DNA from: Octopus bimaculoides
Taxonomy: Eukaryota
Assembly: GCF_001194135.2 (NCBI RefSeq)
Contig: NC_069006.1
Span: 18,746,189 to 18,810,188 of the forward strand
Length of the DNA: 64,000 nt
Direction of reading: 5' to 3'
The notes under the pieces are model-generated. The model saw only the letters and a list, made by a program, of their open reading frames with translations, was not told the origin of the DNA and searched no databases. Shown in pieces: positions 763 through 12,703 of the stretch. Position 1 is the stretch's first letter. Each line of letters begins with the position of its first letter. The translations under genes and the position numbers were made by a program.

Positions 763-816
763 CTGTCTTCTCTTCTTGATTCTCTTTTGATTCTGTCTTA
801 GACTCATTGCATTCAT
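763..816 (-). CDS. Exon (54 nt, phase 1-1): DECNESKTESKENQEEKT
   Basis: acaaaaattccag| ... aagacag|gtaata. Shares the aattccag acceptor and E/K/S-rich composition of the repeat exons. In frame with copy A. Confidence 0.6.
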
Positions 817-4000: not shown

Positions 4001-4129
4001 GAATGTATATATAACACACACACACATATATATACATATGTATATATATAAATGTACATACATAATATACATGTATATATGTGTCTGTATATATGTTTAT
4101 GTATATAGATGCATGTGTATATATATGTT

Positions 4130-4176
<47 letters not shown>

Positions 4177-4812
4177 GTATGGCTGCTCCACATCAAAAGA
4201 GGTTAGCTAGGCAATAATCTTCACTGAAGTATAAATGAAAACGTCCATTAAGTTACGAAAGAATCCTCCACAAATAAACACTAAAAGAGAAAAAGTGTTT
4301 CAACAGTGTAATAAAGTTGTCATTGTAAAAACAAAGAAAAAAAACTAGAGACACAGGCTACAAAAAAAGTTACTATTTAGAGTCACAGGAATGTTAGAAT
4401 TATTCTGTAGACATCAGTTGAAACGGTAGAGAGTAAATGAGGAGAGAATATGTTATAGTAAATAAACACTGTCGAATGTTAGTTAAAAGAGACTTATTAC
4501 TATGAAATGATAAAGAGGCCACAGTCAAGTTACCAGAATGATAAGAAATAGTGACAATATGTTAGATTAACACAAGAGTAAGAGATTATAAAGATGCTAT
4601 AGAAAATATACTATAATAAGAGAAATATAGAAACTGATGTTAAAATATAGACACTAATGAGAAGGGGCAAAAGAGGTTTCTACAAATATAATTGTGTTAG
4701 TTATCATTGAAATATTACATAGGATGATCTAGTATAGATAGAGAACTAAGATAGGAAACTGGTCATCTGACATAACATCTACCAAACTACTTGGGACAGG
4801 AACTAATCTTAC

Positions 4813-4920
4813 CAATATTCTCTTTATCACCTTCACCAGATTTACTGGTTTCTGAATCCTTGTTCTTATTGACATCGTCTGTAAAATCCCCTGATTTTTC
4901 AGTTCCCTCTTTTGGTGAGT
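4813..4920 (-). CDS. Repeat exon copy A (108 nt): DSPKEGTEKSGDFTDDVNKNKDSETSKSGEGDKENI
   Basis: atcttaattccag| ... aatattg|gtaaga; phase 1-1; 6 nt (two codons) shorter than the 114-nt copies. Confidence 0.8.
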
Positions 4921-5175
4921 CTGGAATTAAGATGTTGCTATGGTTACAGAAGCACAGTCTAACTAAACAAAATGGTGTACCTAGCAAGACTGAATATTGT
5001 GTAGAAATTTTTATGGCAACAGTTTGTGGTTTAACTAGATTAGACCTGTTAACTACAATGACTACTGTGTAGATATTTCCATGGTAACAGGTTGTAGTAT
5101 AACCAGTCTTTGGATACTGATGACATACACACATGTACATATATATATGTACATACATATACATATATGTGTGCG

Positions 5176-5228
<53 letters not shown>

Positions 5229-5427
5229 GTGTGTATGTACAACGGTGAGGTATATAAGCGAAGATACTTATGTTAGAAAAATATCATGTACAAACAAATG
5301 GTAACAAAGATCTCAGTTAATATTATGTCATTGTCAAAACACAATAAAGAGAGAAATATTGACAATTATAAGGAATGCATCATTTAGAGTAATGAGAATG
5401 TTGGTGTTTTTCATTAAACATCTGTTA

Positions 5428-5660
5428 CTAACCTTTTGTTACCATATTTCTATTGAAATAAAACTGTCTTCATTTCAATTAATTTTGAAAACAATGAAGA
5501 ATTTAATAAAATAACCTGGTTATTATTAATTAAGCTGCTGTTTGGAACATAAATTAATATGAAATTTTGATGGAAAGTTTGTTTCAGATCACTTTAAAAT
5601 ATGAAGTTTGTATCAAAGAAACAGAGCTGCTTTCAGGTGGGTTGGAATGAAAGGGATTAA
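5428..5660. mobile_element. piggyBac-like MITE (degenerate)
   Basis: taaccttttgttacc ... gaaagggattaa ends. Inserted in the intron between repeat exons A and B. Confidence 0.4.
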
Positions 5661-6028
5661 AGACCAGAGGGTTAGAGTTGATGGAATATATGAATCTACC
5701 TTGGCAGCTGTCTATTTTATTAAAAGACAGCTTCTTAATGACGAAGATGCCACAATTAAATTGTTTAACTGATCAAAGATATCAACACTATGTTGTATTC
5801 ATGCAGATTCTAAAATGTTACTATGGTTCTCTAGAAAATACACTACTATCAAAGAAATGTAGAGGTTGTTAAAATGTAGACACTATTGAGTGTTTATGTT
5901 TCAATAAAGATTATTGTTATATATAATTGAAATATTAGATAGGAAGATTTCTTAAAGATAGACAGCTAAGACAGAAAGTGGGCTAACATAAGCTCTACCA
6001 AACTACTTGGGACAGGAACTAATTTTAC

Positions 6029-6139
6029 CAATATTCTCTTTATTACCTTCAGTTTTACTATTTTCTGAACAATTTTTGTTCTTATTGCCACCATCTTCTG
6101 TAAAATTCCCTGATTTATCCATTCCTTCTTTTGGTGAGT
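6029..6139 (-). CDS. Repeat exon copy B (111 nt): DSPKEGMDKSGNFTEDGGNKNKNCSENSKTEGNKENI
   Basis: gtcttaattccag| ... aatattg|gtaaaa; phase 1-1; 3 nt shorter than the 114-nt copies. Confidence 0.78.
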
Positions 6140-6890
6140 CTGGAATTAAGACAGTTTTCATGATTACAGTTAATAAGTCTAAGAAAATAATGTACCTAGT
6201 AGCAGTTGATATTGAGCAGATGCCTCAATGAAAACAGTTGATGGTCTAATCAAGTTAAACCGGTTTATTATGCTATCTACTGCATAGATTTTCCTAGAGC
6301 AAAAGCTAATCCTTCAACCTGTCTATGGAAGGTGAAAAAAATGATAACAAGGAAGAATATGCTGAGATGAAGATATCCTATGATGTATGCAAATGAAGAT
6401 GGCTCTTTGCAATTTACTGTATGCGTCAAAAAGAGCTATCCCCAAAACAGACAAAAGAAGAATTAAATTGATTAATATAAATGCCATTATAACAACACAA
6501 GCAGAATAGAAATATTGTTGGTAGCTACAAGGAAGGTACAATTGGTACTATTTAAAGTAGCAAAGAATTTTGTGGAATTCATTCAAAGGATCAAATTATA
6601 GACATCAATTCAAAAGGAAGGGACTAATGGATACTAGTAAAAGTTATAGTAAATATAAACTATAAACTGTTTACATTTATTCTATAACCAAAGGATGATA
6701 AAGATGCCATAAACAAGAAACTAACATTATAAAAAATACAAACACTAGAGAGACACTAGAATACCTAAAGAGGTTATTAGAATGAAAGAAAGAGTGAAGA
6801 TCTATAATAGATAAACATCTAAGATAGGGGAACTAGTGATCTGATACATCTACAAAACTAAAAGGGGCAGATTCTAGGTTCCAAGCTTAC

Positions 6891-7004
6891 CAATATTCTC
6901 TTTATCACCTTCACCAGTTTTATTGTTTTCTGAACAATTTTTGTCCTTATTTACGTCGTCTTCAGTAGGATTCCCTGATTTTTCAGTTACTTCTAGTGGT
7001 GAGT
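6891..7004 (-). CDS. Repeat exon copy C (114 nt): DSPLEVTEKSGNPTEDDVNKDKNCSENNKTGEGDKENI
   Basis: atcttaattccag| ... aatattg|gtaagc; phase 1-1; no stop. Confidence 0.8.
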
Positions 7005-7304
7005 CTGGAATTAAGATGTTGCTACAGTTACATTAGTAAAATCTAACTAAACATTATGATGTGCCTATTAAATGTGAATGTTGTGTAGATATATCTGTTG
7101 CAATCTAACAAGATCAGAACAGTTTACTATACTGTTGCCACCGATGTTGCTCTCATTCTTATTGCCATCAGTTTATATTTTGGTCTTCAAGCTTGTTCAG
7201 GTTGGACTACTGTATATGTACTTCTTTGGCAAGTTGATCATATAGCTAATCATTTGAGGTGAATGATATTCATACAGGTATAAATAAATATGTATGCGTG
7301 TGTG

Positions 7305-7336
<32 letters not shown>

Positions 7337-8154
7337 TATATAGATAAGGTCTCGTATAAGTAAAAAAAATACATAAGGTTACAATGAATTGTACATATAA
7401 ATCATAAAAGAGAGAGATTCAATACAATGTTAATGATACCACAGCAAAAACACAAAGAGAGGAGTATAGGCACTCAGCTATAAGGAATATACTATATATG
7501 GTAACAAGGATGGGGAAGAACTGCACTATAAAGATAAAAAGATAGACATAAGTAAAAAAAAAAGGCTAGAGTCACTAAAAGATGGTAGAAAATCATCCAG
7601 GAAAAATACACTGCAGAACATTTTTTAAAAGGTTTTGTTTTTTTTTACTAAGGAATGATGTAGATGTCAGAGTGAAAACACAAGGAGAGAAATATAAACA
7701 ATAATTACGAGGAAGGTACTATTTGGGGTGGACAAGAGTTTACTGAAATTCATTTCAATAATAAAAATATAGATATCAATTCAAAAGAGTAGAGACTAAA
7801 TTTAAATGATTGCCGAAAATGCTTTAGTATAGTCAGGGTTGTCAAGTAAAAAGACAGCTACAGAGAAGTGATAAAGATGTCACAGTCAAGTAAATAGAAT
7901 AAGAAAAAATATGAAAACATACAAGGAAATACCAAGATGCAATAGAAAATATGCTATAATCAAAGAAATGTGGAAATTGTTGAAATATAGATACTGTTGG
8001 GTGAAAAAGAAATGTTTCAGAAGTATTATTGTGTAACATATTAAAACATTATAAAGGGAAATCTAGTATAAACAGGCAACTATGATAGGGAACTGACAAT
8101 CTGACAACAACACCTACAAAACTAATGCGAGCAGGTTCTAGGTTCCAATCTTAC

Positions 8155-8268
8155 CAATTTTCTCTTTATCACTTTCACCAGATTTACTGGTTTCTGAACA
8201 ATCCTTGTTCTTATTGACATCGTCTTCTATAGAATCCCCTGATTTCTCAGTTCCCTCTTTTGGTGAGT
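8155..8268 (-). CDS. Repeat exon copy D (114 nt): DSPKEGTEKSGDSIEDDVNKNKDCSETSKSGESDKEKI
   Basis: atctaaattccag| ... aaaattg|gtaaga; phase 1-1; no stop. Confidence 0.8.
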
Positions 8269-9229
8269 CTGGAATTTAGATGTTGGCTATGGTTACAGAA
8301 TCAAAGTCTAACTGAACAAAATGGTGTACCTAGCAAGATTGAATATTGTGTAGATATTTCTATGGCAACAGCTGGTGGTCTAACTAGATCAGACCTGTTA
8401 ACTACACTGACTACTGTGTAGATATTTCTAAACAGCTTGTTGTCTAACCATTTTAGACTAGATAAATCTACTGACAAGTGTGTAGATGATAGCATTTTCT
8501 TTGTGTGCAAAGATCATGAAGAGCAACATACCCTCAAGAGCTTATGTAAACTGATTACTGACACTGCAGGGCTTTTCTTCTTGTAGTTTTAAAATCTGAA
8601 TCAAGCCATGCAATCTGATCTTACTCTTTAGATTTTGAGGTCTGATCACAGTCGCTCAGTGGGCTAAGACAACTGCAATAACCAGCAAGCTGTAGGTCTT
8701 AAATTTGAGTGGCTTTCTCCAAGGTGAACTGCCTTATAGGGCTGGAGAACTATTCAGGTGTTCCTGGAGGTGTGTCAAAGAGGGCACTGAACTACCTGAG
8801 AGATTCTACTTCTCAATTTGTTATTGGGGTTGACTCCCCAAGCTTTTGCCTTTCCTTACATGTGTAGATAATTCCATAAAAACAGTAGAGCTTCTAACCA
8901 GTCTTGAGAGACTGTTTATGATGATATTGCTGTCAGGGCGCATATACAGCAAAGTGGTCTATAAATGAAGACATACATTAAGTTACAATGAGTCATGTAC
9001 AAACAAAAAAATGAGACAGATTCAATAGAATGTTAGAGATGCCACTGCAAAAACACAAGAAGGAGAGAAGTATAGGCACTTAGCTATAGGAAGGTACTAT
9101 TTAGGGTAATAAGGATGGTGAAAAACTGCATTATAATGATAAAAATATAAATACCATTTAAGAAGGGCAGAGAAACTAAAAGATGATAGAAAGTGTAAAC
9201 GTGGTACAAGCTGTCGTTTTTTTTTCTTT

Positions 9230-9575
9230 GGTGCAGGTGTCAATGTGTAGAAAGAAGCTTGTTTCCTAACCATGTGGTGTTGGGTCCAATCCCACTGCAT
9301 GGCACCTTGAGCAAATTTTTTCTATTACAGCCCCGGGTCAGCCAAAGCCTTGTGAGTGGATTTGATAGATGTAAACTGAGAGAATCCCCCCCACCACCAC
9401 CACCACTACTGCTTGACAACAAGTGTTGGTTTCTTTATGTCCTTCTGACTTAGCAATTCAGTAAAACAGAGACTGATCGAATAAGTATCAGGCTTAAAAA
9501 TAAGCACTTGGGTCAATTCACTTGACTAAAACATTCAAGGTGGTGCCCCAGCATGACCAAAGACTGAAACAAATA
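9230..9575 (+). mobile_element. SINE family 1 copy within the exon array
   Basis: Aligns by eye to 17621-18004. Confidence 0.8.
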
Positions 9576-11108
9576 ATAATAAAAGCCAGAAGATGGTGAT
9601 AATGTAAAAGTTTTACTGTAAAATATACAGTAAAAATATACTGTAGAATGTTTAATGAAAGATTAGTTACTAAAGGATTATGTAAATGCTATTGTGAAAA
9701 CTCAAGAAGGAAAGAAATATAGACACTAGTTACTAGGAAGGTACTACTTGGGGCTTACAAAGGTTTATTGAAATTTATCAAAATTACAAGGGTAAAAATA
9801 TAGACACCACTTCAAGAGAGTAGAGTCTAAATGATGGTAGAAAGTATCAGAGTAAAAACAGGCATACTTCATCATGTCTTTTTCAACTTTATATCATTTC
9901 TTTTTAAGAAATAAACCTTAACTTCTCTAGATTTATCTGACTTTACATTAGTCTCAGTAAACATATTTAAAAGTAGAACTTGAAGCACAAATAAAGTTAT
10001 AAATTACAGCATAAAAATTCTTTAGGACAGAAAAAGTTAAAGGCTACATGTGGGACTTAAAGCCACAGTAGATCTACAGGAGATGTAGGTTCAAATCTCA
10101 CAGGCAGCCTTTGACTTTTTCTATCCAAGAAGGATTTTCAACTCAATATTTACATGCTATTATTTATAACTTTCTGTGTGCTTTGAGATGCACTATTTCC
10201 AAAAAAACAATTATTTCACATTCTCTCAAAAGTTTATAAATTCTTAAAGATTTCAACAACATACAGCTTTTGCTGGTAAGACTAAACTTTCTAAAATGTA
10301 TAGAAAACCCCAAAGAACTGCTTTGGCCCAATGTTTGAAAAACCTGTCATGTTTACAGGAAATGACGGTTTGAGTCACATGAGCAGCCTTTAATGTCAAC
10401 AATATTTAAAAGCATAAAAATAAAAGAAAGCATCTAAAAACCAATACTGAAGTGGAATAGCAAGGAAAGTACATGTTAAAATATGTACAAACCCTTTATT
10501 AGAATAGTTTGTCATCATCATGAACATTTAACATGTGTTTTCTAGGCTGGCATGGGTTGGATGGTTTGACGGGAGCTGGCAAGCCGGAGAGCAGCACCAG
10601 GCTCCAGTTGTCTGTTTTTGCATGGTTTCTATGCCCTTCCTAATGCCAACCACTTTTCAGAGTGTACTGGATGCTTTGTACGTGGCACCAGCACAGAAGC
10701 TTTGTATGTGGCACCAACACAGGTGCTTTTTATGTGGCACTGGCAATAGATTTTTTTTTAATGATTGTTCATGTTATGTCATTTTTCCAAGTTGAGTTGC
10801 ATATCTTGGAATCAATTATTGAAATAAGATGATGTATACCTGTACTTCAAAAGAAAGTTTATTGATGGTTTTGTTAAAAGATAGCAACCCAGTGACGATA
10901 AAGATGCCAAAGTCAAATCATCATAATAATAAAAAATATCAACACTATACTAAACACACAAAGATACTAAATTATTATAAAGTGGAGAGTGTAATTACAT
11001 AACAATGAAATAGAGGGTGAAGATCTATACTGGACAGAAAACTAAAATAGGAACTGACAATCTGACAAAACATCTAGCAAACTAATAGAGGGCAAAATCT
11101 AACCTTAC

Positions 11109-11222
11109 CACTATTCTCTTTATCATTTTCACCAGTTTTACTGGTTTCTGAACAATTCTTGTTTTTATTAATGTCGTCTTCTGTAGAATCCCCTGATTTC
11201 TCAGTTACCTCTTGTTGTGGGT
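11109..11222 (-). CDS. Repeat exon copy E (114 nt): DPQQEVTEKSGDSTEDDINKNKNCSETSKTGENDKENS
   Basis: catcataatttcag| ... aatagtg|gtaagg; phase 1-1; no stop. Confidence 0.8.
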
Positions 11223-11319
11223 CTGAAATTATGATGGTTCCATAAATACAGTATCAAAATCTAACTAAACAAAATCATGTTTCTAGTTTGATATTGATTA
11301 TTATGTATATAAGTGCAGA

Positions 11320-11770
11320 TATGGCTGCAAGATTAAGAAGATTGCCTTGCTATCATGTGGTTTTGGGTTCAGTTCCATGGCGTGGCATCTTGAGTAAATG
11401 ACTTCTATTATAGCCCCAGGTTAACTAATGCCTTGTGAGTGAATTTGTTAGACAGAAACTATGTGGAAGCCCAGCATGTGTATGTAACTTTGTGTTGTGT
11501 TTGTCCCCACTCCACAAGTACTGGTATTGATTTGTTTGACTAAACTCTTCAAGGCAGTGCTCAAGCATGGCCACAGTCCAAAGACTGAAACTAGTAAGAG
11601 ATAAAAGATACATATTATACATGCTTATAAAGTTTTGTATATTTATAGTTAATATACTGAAGGCTTTGGTTCGCCTGGGGCTGTAGTAAAAGACACTTGC
11701 CCAAAATGACATGCAGTGGGACTGAAACCACAGCCTTGTGGTTAGGAAGTAAACTTCTTCTTACACAGTT
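11320..11770. mobile_element. SINE family 1: plus-strand copy followed by an inverted head fragment
   Basis: 11320-11610 is on the plus strand; 11655-11770 is the reverse complement of the head (gacacttgcccaa...gtgggactgaaacc). Confidence 0.75.
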
Positions 11771-12589
11771 TCACTGTGTATATGTATATTAGATTACAAA
11801 GGACAAATGATAAACTGGCTTTCTCATTTGTCTTTTAAAGACCTGGCCAAGTCAGCAGGAAATGATGTAAGCTTTCTGATCCAGTTGTCATAGCCAGAGA
11901 TTCAGGATATGAGGTTTGAAACCTTGATGGAGTAAGGCAGGACCTTGGTATGGTAATGTAGGATCTTGTTTGCTGGGAGAGGTTAGAGAGGTTTGTCCCA
12001 ACTGGAGTTGTCAAATGATGATGTCAATGAGTTATACACAAACCAAAAGTATAAAGAGAATTTCATCAGAATGATAAAGATATCATTGTGAAAACACAAT
12101 AAAAGAGAGAAATATAGTCATTGGTACTAGGAAGGTATTATTTATGATAACAAAATTTGGTTGTGATTTATTACAAGGATAAAAGATAGAGATGTCATTT
12201 AAAAAGTGATTAAAAGATGGAAGAAAACAGAATGGTAAATAGTCTACAAGAGGGTTATAAACATTAGATGTAATAAGACTAGTACAGGATTTTAAATATG
12301 CCACAGACAAACGACTAGAACAATAAAAATAAACTATCAAAACTAGGTAAATATAGTCACTAAAATATTACTAAGATGCTATAGAAATTACACTATGAAA
12401 AAAGGATAGAAGGATTGTTAACATATAGACACACATGAGAGGAGAAAAAGAAGTTATATTAAATATTATTGGGTTAGATATCATTGAAATATTATAGAGG
12501 AAAATCTAGTACAGATAGAGAACTAAGACAGGGAACTGGTCATCTGACATAACATCTACCAAACTACTTGGGACAGGAACTAATCTTAC

Positions 12590-12703
12590 CAATATTCTCT
12601 TTATCACCTTCACCAGATTTACTGGTTTCTGAACAATCCTTGTTCTTATTGGCCTCATCTTCTGTAGAATCCCCTGATTTCTCAGTTCCCTCTTTTGGTG
12701 AGC
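12590..12703 (-). CDS. Repeat exon copy F (114 nt): GSPKEGTEKSGDSTEDEANKNKDCSETSKSGEGDKENI
   Basis: atcttaattccag| ... aatattg|gtaaga; phase 1-1; no stop. Confidence 0.8.

What the first reader, a model, noticed from the sequence alone, without database searches (positions are those of the whole stretch)
4813..12703. Array of six tandemly duplicated, symmetric phase-1 cassette exons in a smoothelin-like gene
Seen: six paralogous exons of 114, 114, 114, 114, 111 and 108 nt. Each has an intact AG acceptor (mostly aattccag) and GTAA donor, is phase 1-1, has no stop, and differs in length only by whole codons, while the flanking introns have diverged and collected TEs. They encode 36-38-aa D/E/K/S/G/N-rich repeats, with a Cys kept in five of six. 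Any subset can splice in frame after the coiled-coil exon. Inference: a modular, length-tunable disordered spacer between the smoothelin/coiled-coil region and the downstream part of the protein, comparable in logic to titin PEVK exon modules. Inclusion could be combinatorial, tissue-specific or mutually exclusive. I do not know of this arrangement in smoothelins.
Basis: partly seen in the sequence, partly recalled or inferred. Interest (0 to 1): 0.82.

Follow-up and report, generated by a model that had tools for sequence, protein, structure and literature searches.

The report
Six duplicated cassette exons, octopus smoothelin-like gene
An octopus gene for a smoothelin-like (muscle/actin-associated) protein carries six tandem copies of a small exon coding for an acidic, probably floppy 36-38-residue module; this is a real but fairly ordinary case of exon duplication, and a sister species' public gene models already include such exons.

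Summary
Six paralogous exons (114, 114, 114, 114, 111, 108 nt) lie on the minus strand at 4813-12703. Each has an AG acceptor and a GTAA donor, is phase 1-1, and is open in one shared frame.

They are under constraint. Exon identity is 86.5%, against 62-74% in the co-duplicated intron flanks. All 3 exon indels are 3 nt; only 1 of 14 flank indels is a multiple of 3.

The gene is smoothelin-like (Pfam Smoothelin domain in the window; CH domain in orthologues). A RefSeq model, Octopus sinensis LOC115224761 isoform X23, has four such modules in tandem right after the Smoothelin domain and skips the coiled-coil exon. Two of them match window copies R1 and R6 with one residue changed. An Argonauta model has the coiled-coil exon and no modules.

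RNA-seq contigs from a related, unidentified animal (probably a decapodiform cephalopod) differ only by swapping one homologous 99-nt exon for the coiled-coil exon.

Best reading: a lineage-specific amplification, by unequal crossing-over of a ~0.85-kb unit, of an older alternative exon. It gives a frame-neutral acidic spacer of variable length. Mutual exclusivity among copies is contradicted. Combinatorial or tissue-specific use was not tested. The titin PEVK comparison holds only as an analogy.

The parts
29041..29229 (-). Exon A (189 nt, phase 0-0). It is an internal exon of the long Ig-containing isoforms and also carries the ATG (29088) of the short isoforms (MTSYSNIDDEDQLEK...). It holds the first part of the Smoothelin domain.
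   Evidence: Sequence read. tblastn of P0002 residues 890-959 (84%) and of P0001 residues 1-20. Pfam hit.
21309..21384 (-). Exon B (76 nt, phase 0 to 1), the core of the Smoothelin domain (LEKVDNFEERKKIRARLREIREKQM). Donor TGA|GTAAGT.
17067..17351 (-). Coiled-coil exon (285 nt, phase 1-1). It is conserved across molluscs and other invertebrates, present in Argonauta isoform X34 and skipped in O. sinensis isoform X23.
12590..12703 (-). Repeat exon R1 (114 nt, 38 aa, (G/S)SPKEGTEKSGDSTEDEANKNKDCSETSKSGEGDKENI). It is the orthologue of module 1 of O. sinensis X23 (1 residue different).
11109..11222 (-). Repeat exon R2 (114 nt), one of the more diverged copies (DPQQEVTEKSGD...). Acceptor aatttcAG, donor GTAAGG. 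An inverted pair of SINE-like repeats brackets it.
8155..8268 (-). Repeat exon R3 (114 nt). It belongs to the young R1/R3/R6 subgroup (94-95% identical to each other).
6891..7004 (-). Repeat exon R4 (114 nt), a more diverged copy. Donor GTAAGC.
6029..6139 (-). Repeat exon R5 (111 nt, one 3-nt deletion), a more diverged copy. Its donor GTAAAA departs furthest from the GTAAG seen in the other five copies.
4813..4920 (-). Repeat exon R6 (108 nt, two 3-nt deletions, one of which removes the Cys). It is the orthologue of module 2 of O. sinensis X23 (same two deletions, 1 residue different). Its flanks are mosaic: the 5' flank is R3-like and the 3' flank is R1-like.
763..816 (-). 54-nt acidic exon (DECNESKTESKENQEEKT, phase 1-1, acceptor aaattccAG). 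It follows the repeat modules in O. sinensis X23. It is not detectably homologous to the repeats.

Best explanation
The array is a lineage-specific tandem amplification of one small alternative coding exon of the octopus smoothelin-like gene (orthologue of O. sinensis LOC115224761).

The ancestral duplication unit was the exon plus essentially its whole intron, about 0.85 kb. It multiplied by unequal crossing-over. The introns later swelled with SINE-like insertions and microsatellites.

Every copy has a length that is a multiple of 3 and is phase 1-1, as are the neighbouring coiled-coil exon and the 54-nt exon. Each copy can therefore be included or skipped without changing the frame. Each inclusion adds a 36-38-residue acidic D/E/K/S/N/G-rich segment. 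From its composition it is probably disordered, with one Cys, an SP site and CK2-type S/T-x-x-D/E sites.

The result is a spacer of variable length and charge. It sits between the N-terminal part of the protein (Ig domains in long isoforms, then the Smoothelin domain) and the C-terminal actin-binding CH domain.

Shown here:
- the anatomy of the six exons;
- selective constraint on them;
- coding use of orthologous copies, in tandem, in a public gene model;
- real transcripts in a related cephalopod that swap a homologous single exon for the coiled-coil exon.

Inferred, not shown:
- that all six copies are used in this species;
- that their number per transcript varies;
- disorder of the module;
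- regulation through the purine-rich exon bodies (67-70% purine) and the rather poor pyrimidine tracts (55-60% Y).
For: (1) Constraint. Pooled pairwise identity is 86.5% in the exon, against 71-74% in the adjacent 100 nt and 62-67% in the 200-250 nt of co-duplicated intron. All 15 copy pairs show the exon less diverged than its flanks, 14 of them with Fisher p<0.05. Exon indels are 3 events, all of 3 nt. Flank indels are 14 events, only one a multiple of 3. Pooled pN/pS is about 0.56.

(2) Coding use. An exhaustive HMMER scan of 1.84 billion representative proteins finds one protein with the module. It is XP_036369634.1, O. sinensis LOC115224761 isoform X23. It has four tandem modules at residues 982-1128, between the Smoothelin domain (944-978) and the 54-nt-exon peptide, with the CH domain at 1263-1367.

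(3) Orthology. R1 versus module 1, and R6 versus module 2, each differ by 1 residue, and R6 shares both of its deletions with module 2. That is at least as conserved as the neighbouring exons: exon A 84%, exon B 24 of 25 residues by eye, and the 54-nt exon 16 of 18 residues.

(4) Alternative use. The Argonauta model X34 has the coiled-coil exon and no modules. X23 has modules and no coiled-coil exon.

(5) Ancestry. Logan RNA-seq contigs L002 and L003 have coding sequences that are 100% identical, except that a 99-nt D/K/S-rich exon ending ...NKENI is replaced by a 273-nt coiled-coil exon, at the same position and phase. That 99-nt exon aligns to the octopus consensus with z about 5 at both DNA and protein level, and 0 of 2000 and 0 of 5000 shuffles reach the score.

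(6) Unit and turnover. Similarity extends about 180 nt 5' and 300-520 nt 3' of each exon. The shortest spacing between copies is 865 nt. R6 is a mosaic: 5' flank 91% to R3, first 100 nt of the 3' flank 93% to R1. O. sinensis modules 3 and 4 are identical to each other and have no 1:1 partner in the window.
Against: - No transcript evidence from the window's own species could be reached. X23 and X34 are computational gene models, and repeated exons are error-prone in such models.
- R2, R4 and R5 have no counterpart in X23 and could be rarely used or decaying.
- Amino-acid constraint is weak (pN/pS about 0.56; variable sites are spread evenly over codon positions).
- Open-frame retention is not significant on its own.
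- The species of the 'squid-like' transcripts is not known.
Confidence: 0.75

Rival explanations
1. Only the young, nearly identical copies (R1, R3, R6) are functional exons. R2, R4 and R5 are relic pseudo-exons that are no longer spliced in and merely have not yet picked up a stop codon.
For: - R2, R4 and R5 are the most diverged copies (13-16 differences from the consensus, against 2-4).
- None has a counterpart among the four modules of O. sinensis X23.
- R5's donor GTAAAA departs furthest from the GTAAG of the other copies.
- Keeping the frame open at this divergence is expected by chance in about 65-70% of cases per copy.
Against: - Among these three copies the exon is still clearly less diverged than its flanks (R2-R4 p=0.017, R2-R5 p=0.0014, R4-R5 p=2.8e-5).
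- R5's only indel is 3 nt.
- All AG and GT dinucleotides are kept.
- dN/dS among the three is 0.37-0.45.
Confidence: 0.15
2. The six exons are constitutive within the isoforms that use them: all six are always included together as one block. The only regulated choice would be block versus coiled-coil exon, so there is no graded or combinatorial length tuning.
For: - X23 includes four modules consecutively with none skipped between them in the protein.
- The related cephalopod transcripts show a simple either/or choice between the single D/K/S exon and the coiled-coil exon.
Against: - If O. sinensis retains orthologues of R2-R5 between its R1-like and R6-like copies, X23 skips them. This is not known.
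- At least 34 isoform models exist for this gene (isoform numbering), which suggests many splice patterns.
- The pyrimidine tracts are poorer than those of exons A, B and the coiled-coil exon (0.55-0.60 against 0.65-0.80).
Confidence: 0.25
3. The copies form a mutually exclusive exon cluster, with one copy chosen per transcript, as in Dscam-type clusters.
For: Tandem exon duplicates are the usual source of mutually exclusive exons (established knowledge; PMC5740500 surveys the human cases).
Against: - X23 contains four copies in series.
- All lengths are multiples of 3, so including two copies is not penalised by a frameshift.
- Introns are 0.75-2.8 kb, so there is no steric block.
- No conserved inverted 'docking/selector' pairs were found. 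The only long inverted repeats are a SINE pair and TA/TG microsatellites.
Confidence: 0.03
4. It is not a gene feature at all: a satellite or transposable-element array, or an assembly artefact, whose open frame is an accident.
For: The region is repeat-rich, the window has 10 assembly gaps, and frame retention alone is not significant.
Against: - The unit occurs nowhere else in the 64 kb.
- No gap lies inside the array, and the copies differ by 5-22%, so they are not collapsed or duplicated reads.
- The peptide is in a RefSeq protein of another species, with 1-residue differences.
- The exon-versus-flank contrast and the 3n-only indels point to coding constraint.
Confidence: 0.02

Closest known systems
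Alternative cassette exons created by tandem exon duplication (the general class described by Kondrashov & Koonin and by Letunic et al.; cited from my own knowledge)
   Same: Adjacent homologous exons in one gene, with lengths that are multiples of 3, symmetric phase, intact splice sites, and co-duplicated flanking intron. Some gene models include them and others do not.
   Different: Most described cases are pairs, often mutually exclusive, and encode parts of folded domains. Here six copies encode a low-complexity linker and are used in series in the one model that has them.
Titin PEVK exon modules (PMC6469411)
   Same: Many small tandemly duplicated exons in a muscle cytoskeletal protein. 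They encode a charged, unstructured spacer and are frame-neutral. Exon number changes between species through duplication and loss. In titin they are differentially spliced.
   Different: It is a different gene. The composition differs (PEVK(A) fraction 0.32-0.39 against at least 0.54; no PPAK motif). There are six copies rather than about 100. An elastic role has not been tested.
Vertebrate smoothelin family (SMTN-A/B, SMTNL1/CHASM, SMTNL2; from my own knowledge) and mollusc smoothelin-like proteins (e.g. Gigantopelta P0022, scallop catch-muscle smoothelin-like protein, PMC5963113)
   Same: A Smoothelin domain plus a C-terminal CH domain. Long and short isoforms. An Ig + Smoothelin + CH architecture is also seen in a gastropod. 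Association with muscle.
   Different: None of the other 120 smoothelin-family proteins retrieved from across animals contains the 38-residue module; only O. sinensis X23 does. In other molluscs it is the coiled-coil module that is repeated.
Single 99-nt D/K/S-rich cassette exon in transcripts from a related, unidentified cephalopod (Logan contigs L001/L002, protein P0003)
   Same: Same position (directly after the Smoothelin-domain exon), same phase, same C-terminal ...SG(D/E)xxKENI ending. It alternates with the coiled-coil exon.
   Different: It is single-copy and 33 residues long, with no Cys. Only the 3' third is clearly alignable. The species is unknown.

Membership tests
Smoothelin-family gene | Smoothelin domain (Pfam PF12510) | tested here: met
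   The window's exons A+B score 43.8 bits (cut-off 23, E 2.5e-11).
Smoothelin-family gene | C-terminal calponin-homology (CH) domain (PF00307) | tested here: inconclusive
   The CH exons lie beyond the window's start. The orthologues P0001 and P0002, which share the window's exons, do carry PF00307.
Tandemly duplicated alternative (cassette) exons | Two or more adjacent homologous exons within one gene, with co-duplicated intron | tested here: met
   Six copies at 78-95% identity. Flank homology extends about 180 nt 5' and 300-520 nt 3'.
Tandemly duplicated alternative (cassette) exons | Frame-neutral: length a multiple of 3, the same phase at both ends, and compatible with the neighbouring exons | tested here: met
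   Lengths 114/114/114/114/111/108, phase 1-1. Exon B ends in phase 1; the coiled-coil exon and the 54-nt exon are phase 1-1.
Tandemly duplicated alternative (cassette) exons | Purifying selection on the exon relative to its intron | tested here: met
   86.5% against 62-74% identity. Exon indels are all multiples of 3, against 1 of 14 in the flanks. R1 and R6 differ by 1 residue from their O. sinensis counterparts.
Tandemly duplicated alternative (cassette) exons | Transcripts with and without the exon(s) | tested here: inconclusive
   For octopods there are only gene models (X23 with four modules, X34 with none). Real transcripts show the choice only for the single homologous exon in a related cephalopod.
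Mutually exclusive exon cluster | Exactly one member of the cluster per mature transcript | tested here: not met
   O. sinensis X23 carries four members in series.
Mutually exclusive exon cluster | An enforcing mechanism (frameshift on double inclusion, an intron too short to splice, or docking/selector RNA pairing) | tested here: not met
   Lengths are multiples of 3, introns are 0.75-2.8 kb, and there are no conserved inverted pairs apart from a SINE pair and microsatellites.
Titin PEVK modules | P+E+V+K(+A) fraction of at least about 0.54 per exon (criterion of PMC6469411) | tested here: not met
   0.32-0.39 per module.
Titin PEVK modules | Acts as an entropic spring in series with the load-bearing filament | not testable with these tools
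   This needs single-molecule or muscle mechanics.

The most novel reading that the evidence does not exclude
An ancestral single alternative exon of the cephalopod smoothelin-like gene was amplified in the Octopus lineage. The resulting array still turns over by unequal crossing-over: six copies here, a differently composed set in O. sinensis. It is spliced combinatorially, giving up to 2^6 spacer lengths and charges (with or without the coiled-coil exon) between the Ig/Smoothelin part and the actin-binding CH domain. The spacer length would be tuned by tissue or muscle type in the muscular hydrostat.
Probability: 0.25. Interest if true: 0.5.

Novelty: new member of a known kind. Interest (0 to 1): 0.3.

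Why it matters
If the copies are used in variable numbers, this would be a compact, tractable invertebrate example of how tandem exon amplification builds a length-adjustable disordered linker in a muscle cytoskeletal protein. The ancestral single-exon state is still visible in another cephalopod, and copy turnover is visible between two Octopus species.

It also gives annotators a concrete check. Repeated small exons like these are easily dropped or mis-joined in short-read-based gene models.

It does not reveal a new mechanism. Tandem exon duplication, symmetric-phase modules and repeat-encoded disordered spacers are all well known.

Tried and rejected
- The 54-nt exon (763-816) as a truncated seventh repeat: rejected. 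Its acceptor looks similar (aaattccag), but protein and DNA alignments are no better than shuffles, and nhmmer does not find it.
- Open-frame retention as proof of coding: rejected as insufficient (joint P about 0.24).
- Argonauta genomic locus, to look for the array in a distant octopod: no DNA was returned because the gene spans more than 100 kb.
I did not try another route.
- Third word-indexed protein search, with the squid-type linker: no hits, not even the source protein. This index also failed to return P0002 for its own substring. So the absence of octopus hits says nothing.
- Pfam on the concatenated repeats: no family.
- Literature: no paper holds smoothelin together with cephalopod, and the only paper holding smoothelin and octopus is on an unrelated topic. 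The SRA run numbers of the squid-like contigs appear in no paper.
- Docking/selector RNA structures: none found.
- TE or satellite origin: no other copies in the window.

Full report
**Observation.**
- Six paralogous segments lie at 12590-12703, 11109-11222, 8155-8268, 6891-7004, 6029-6139 and 4813-4920. Their lengths are 114, 114, 114, 114, 111 and 108 nt.
- Each follows an AG (aattccAG in five copies, aatttcAG in R2) and precedes GTAA.
- One frame, offset 2 (phase 1-1), is open in all six. It encodes (G/D)SPKEGTEKSGDSTEDDVNKNKDCSETSKSGEGDKENI-type modules of 38, 38, 38, 38, 37 and 36 residues. The Cys is present in five copies.
- A 21-nt core motif occurs 6 times, against 0.07 expected.
- An nhmmer profile finds exactly six copies in the 64 kb.
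- No assembly gap lies inside the array.

**Gene context.** On the same strand, going upstream, lie three further exons.
- A 285-nt coiled-coil exon (17067-17351, phase 1-1).
- A 76-nt exon B (21309-21384, phase 0 to 1).
- A 189-nt exon A (29041-29229), which also carries the ATG of the short isoforms.

Exons A+B hit Pfam Smoothelin at 43.8 bits, against a cut-off of 23. Downstream lies a 54-nt acidic exon (763-816, phase 1-1). Because exon B ends in phase 1 and everything after it is phase 1-1, any subset of these exons can be joined in frame. Splicing B to R1 gives ...KQM-S-SPKEG. Splicing B to the coiled-coil exon gives ...KQM-K-EWEE.

**Are they exons under selection?** The duplication carried the intron along with the exon. 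Similarity between units extends about 180 nt 5' and 300-520 nt 3' of the exon.
- Within this co-duplicated DNA the exon stands out. Pooled pairwise identity is 86.5%, against 71% and 74% in the nearest 100 nt on either side, and 62% and 67% further out.
- The exon is less diverged than its flanks in all 15 copy pairs, 14 of them with Fisher p<0.05. This includes the three pairs among the old copies R2, R4 and R5.
- The exon has three indel events, all of 3 nt. The 215 flanking columns have 14 events, of which one is a multiple of 3.
- Protein-level constraint is mild. Pooled pN/pS is about 0.56, and variable sites are spread evenly over codon positions. That fits a low-complexity linker.
- Keeping the frame open is not significant by itself.

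**Are they used as coding sequence?** An exhaustive HMMER scan of 1.84 billion representative proteins with the six concatenated modules returned a single protein. It is XP_036369634.1, 'uncharacterized protein LOC115224761 isoform X23 [Octopus sinensis]'.
- Its order of parts is: two I-set Ig domains, the Smoothelin domain (944-978), four tandem modules (982-1128), the 54-nt-exon peptide, a Thr-rich stretch, and the CH domain (1263-1367).
- It lacks the coiled-coil exon.
- Module 1 differs from R1 by one residue. Module 2 differs from R6 by one residue and shares both of R6's codon deletions. Modules 3 and 4 are identical to each other and have no 1:1 partner in the window.
- So the R1/R6 duplication predates the split of the two species. 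These exons have been conserved at least as well as neighbouring exons (exon A 84% identity).
- An Argonauta hians model of the same gene (isoform X34, 303 aa) has the coiled-coil exon and no modules.
- These are computational models. No octopus transcript reads were reachable.

**Origin.** The closest non-octopod relatives in the database are complete ORFs on Logan RNA-seq contigs, P0003-P0005.
- Contigs L002 and L003 come from runs with neighbouring accession numbers, so perhaps from one study. Their coding sequences are 100% identical over the first 128 nt and the last 690 nt.
- They differ only in an internal module. One has a 99-nt exon encoding DAKTEAKPAASASTPDSKSTSQKKSGDANKENI. The other has a 273-nt coiled-coil exon.
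- The position and the split codons (G|AT and G|AA, each module followed by G|AT) match the octopus phase-1 layout.
- The 99-nt exon aligns to the octopus repeat consensus much better than shuffled versions. The z-score is about 5 at DNA and protein level, and 0 of 2000 and 0 of 5000 shuffles reach the score. hhalign sees only the last 12 residues (P 0.003).
- I read this as follows: the module was already a single alternative exon, chosen against the coiled-coil exon, in an older cephalopod ancestor, and was later amplified in the Octopus lineage.
- The species of these runs is unknown. 'Decapodiform' is my guess.
- None of the other 120 smoothelin-family proteins retrieved from across animals has the module.

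**How the array evolved.** Acceptor-to-acceptor spacings are 1481, 2954, 1264, 865 and 1219 nt.
- The 865-nt spacing is about the size of the shared unit.
- The longer introns contain SINE-like elements that have dozens of other copies in the window, plus microsatellites.
- R6 is a mosaic. Its 5' flank is 91% identical to R3's, and the first 100 nt of its 3' flank are 93% identical to R1's.
- This mosaic, together with the different module set in O. sinensis, is what unequal crossing-over or gene conversion in a tandem array produces.

**Likely function.** The modules contain 44% charged residues, carry a net charge of -0.13 per residue, and have a mean hydropathy of 0.28, against a 0.46 order/disorder boundary.
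- They carry an SP site and CK2-type S/T-x-x-D/E sites.
- They have no Pfam family.
- I infer a disordered acidic spacer whose length and charge depend on how many modules are included. It sits between the Smoothelin/Ig part and the actin-binding CH domain.
- The exon bodies are 67-70% purine, and their pyrimidine tracts (55-60% Y) are poorer than those of exons A, B and the coiled-coil exon (65-80%). This is compatible with enhancer-dependent, regulated inclusion, but it is inference only.
- In scallop, a smoothelin-like protein is enriched in catch muscle (PMC5963113). A muscle role for the octopus protein is plausible but was not tested here.

**Comparison with what is known.**
- The array meets the structural criteria for tandemly duplicated cassette exons.
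- It fails the mutually-exclusive test, because four copies occur in series in X23, lengths are multiples of 3, and there is no docking/selector pairing.
- It fails the PEVK composition test: 0.32-0.39 against 0.54 (PMC6469411). The titin comparison is therefore an analogy of logic, not family membership.

**Novelty.** The kind of feature is well known. This instance is undescribed in the papers searched but is already present in RefSeq isoform models of a sister species.

**What did not work.**
- The Argonauta locus was not retrievable.
- The last word-indexed protein search found nothing.
- The 54-nt exon is not a seventh repeat.

Noticed in passing
window 9230-9388, 11313-11471, 11660-11768, 13413-13763, 17621-17779, 21889-22038 and many more: A SINE-like interspersed repeat of about 110-370 nt, at 66-80% identity. 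It has dozens of copies in both orientations across the window, and several sit inside the array's introns.
   Followed up: partly
window 9237-9351 and 11660-11774: An inverted pair of the SINE-like element (115 nt, 74% complementary) brackets repeat exon R2 (11109-11222). Such pairs can loop out an exon in the pre-mRNA. No evidence on whether this happens here.
   Followed up: no
window 4079-4181 and 5124-5226: Self-complementary (TA)n/(TG)n microsatellites lie on both sides of repeat exon R6.
   Followed up: no
window 38948-39307 (+): An ORF with a mariner-type transposase DDE fragment (Pfam PF01359, 38.5 bits). It is a transposon remnant in the large upstream intron.
   Followed up: partly
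window 29041-29229 (-) and upstream to 64000: Exon A is internal in the long Ig-containing isoform of O. sinensis but also holds the ATG of the short isoforms. None of the 889 N-terminal residues of the long isoform map to 29-64 kb. The preceding intron is therefore longer than 35 kb, or the long form is absent in this species.
   Followed up: partly
window 18967-19135, 23630-23702, 28619-28855, 30556-30671, 33607-33616, 36216-36283, 37703-37750, 49656-49701, 50529-50668, 52595-52755: Ten runs of N (assembly gaps), mostly next to TA/TG microsatellites. None falls inside the exon array.
   Followed up: yes
L002 (CDS 261-1175) versus L003 (CDS 417-1505): Transcript contigs from a related, unidentified cephalopod are identical except for one swapped internal exon (99-nt acidic exon versus 273-nt coiled-coil exon). 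A third form, P0004, probably from another species, has a 20-residue Cys-containing module at the same place.
   Followed up: partly
proteins P0006, P0007, P0008, P0009 (other molluscs) versus window 17098-17349: In bivalve and other mollusc smoothelin-like proteins the coiled-coil module matches the window's coiled-coil exon two or three times in tandem. In those lineages it is the coiled-coil unit that is repeated, not the acidic unit.
   Followed up: no
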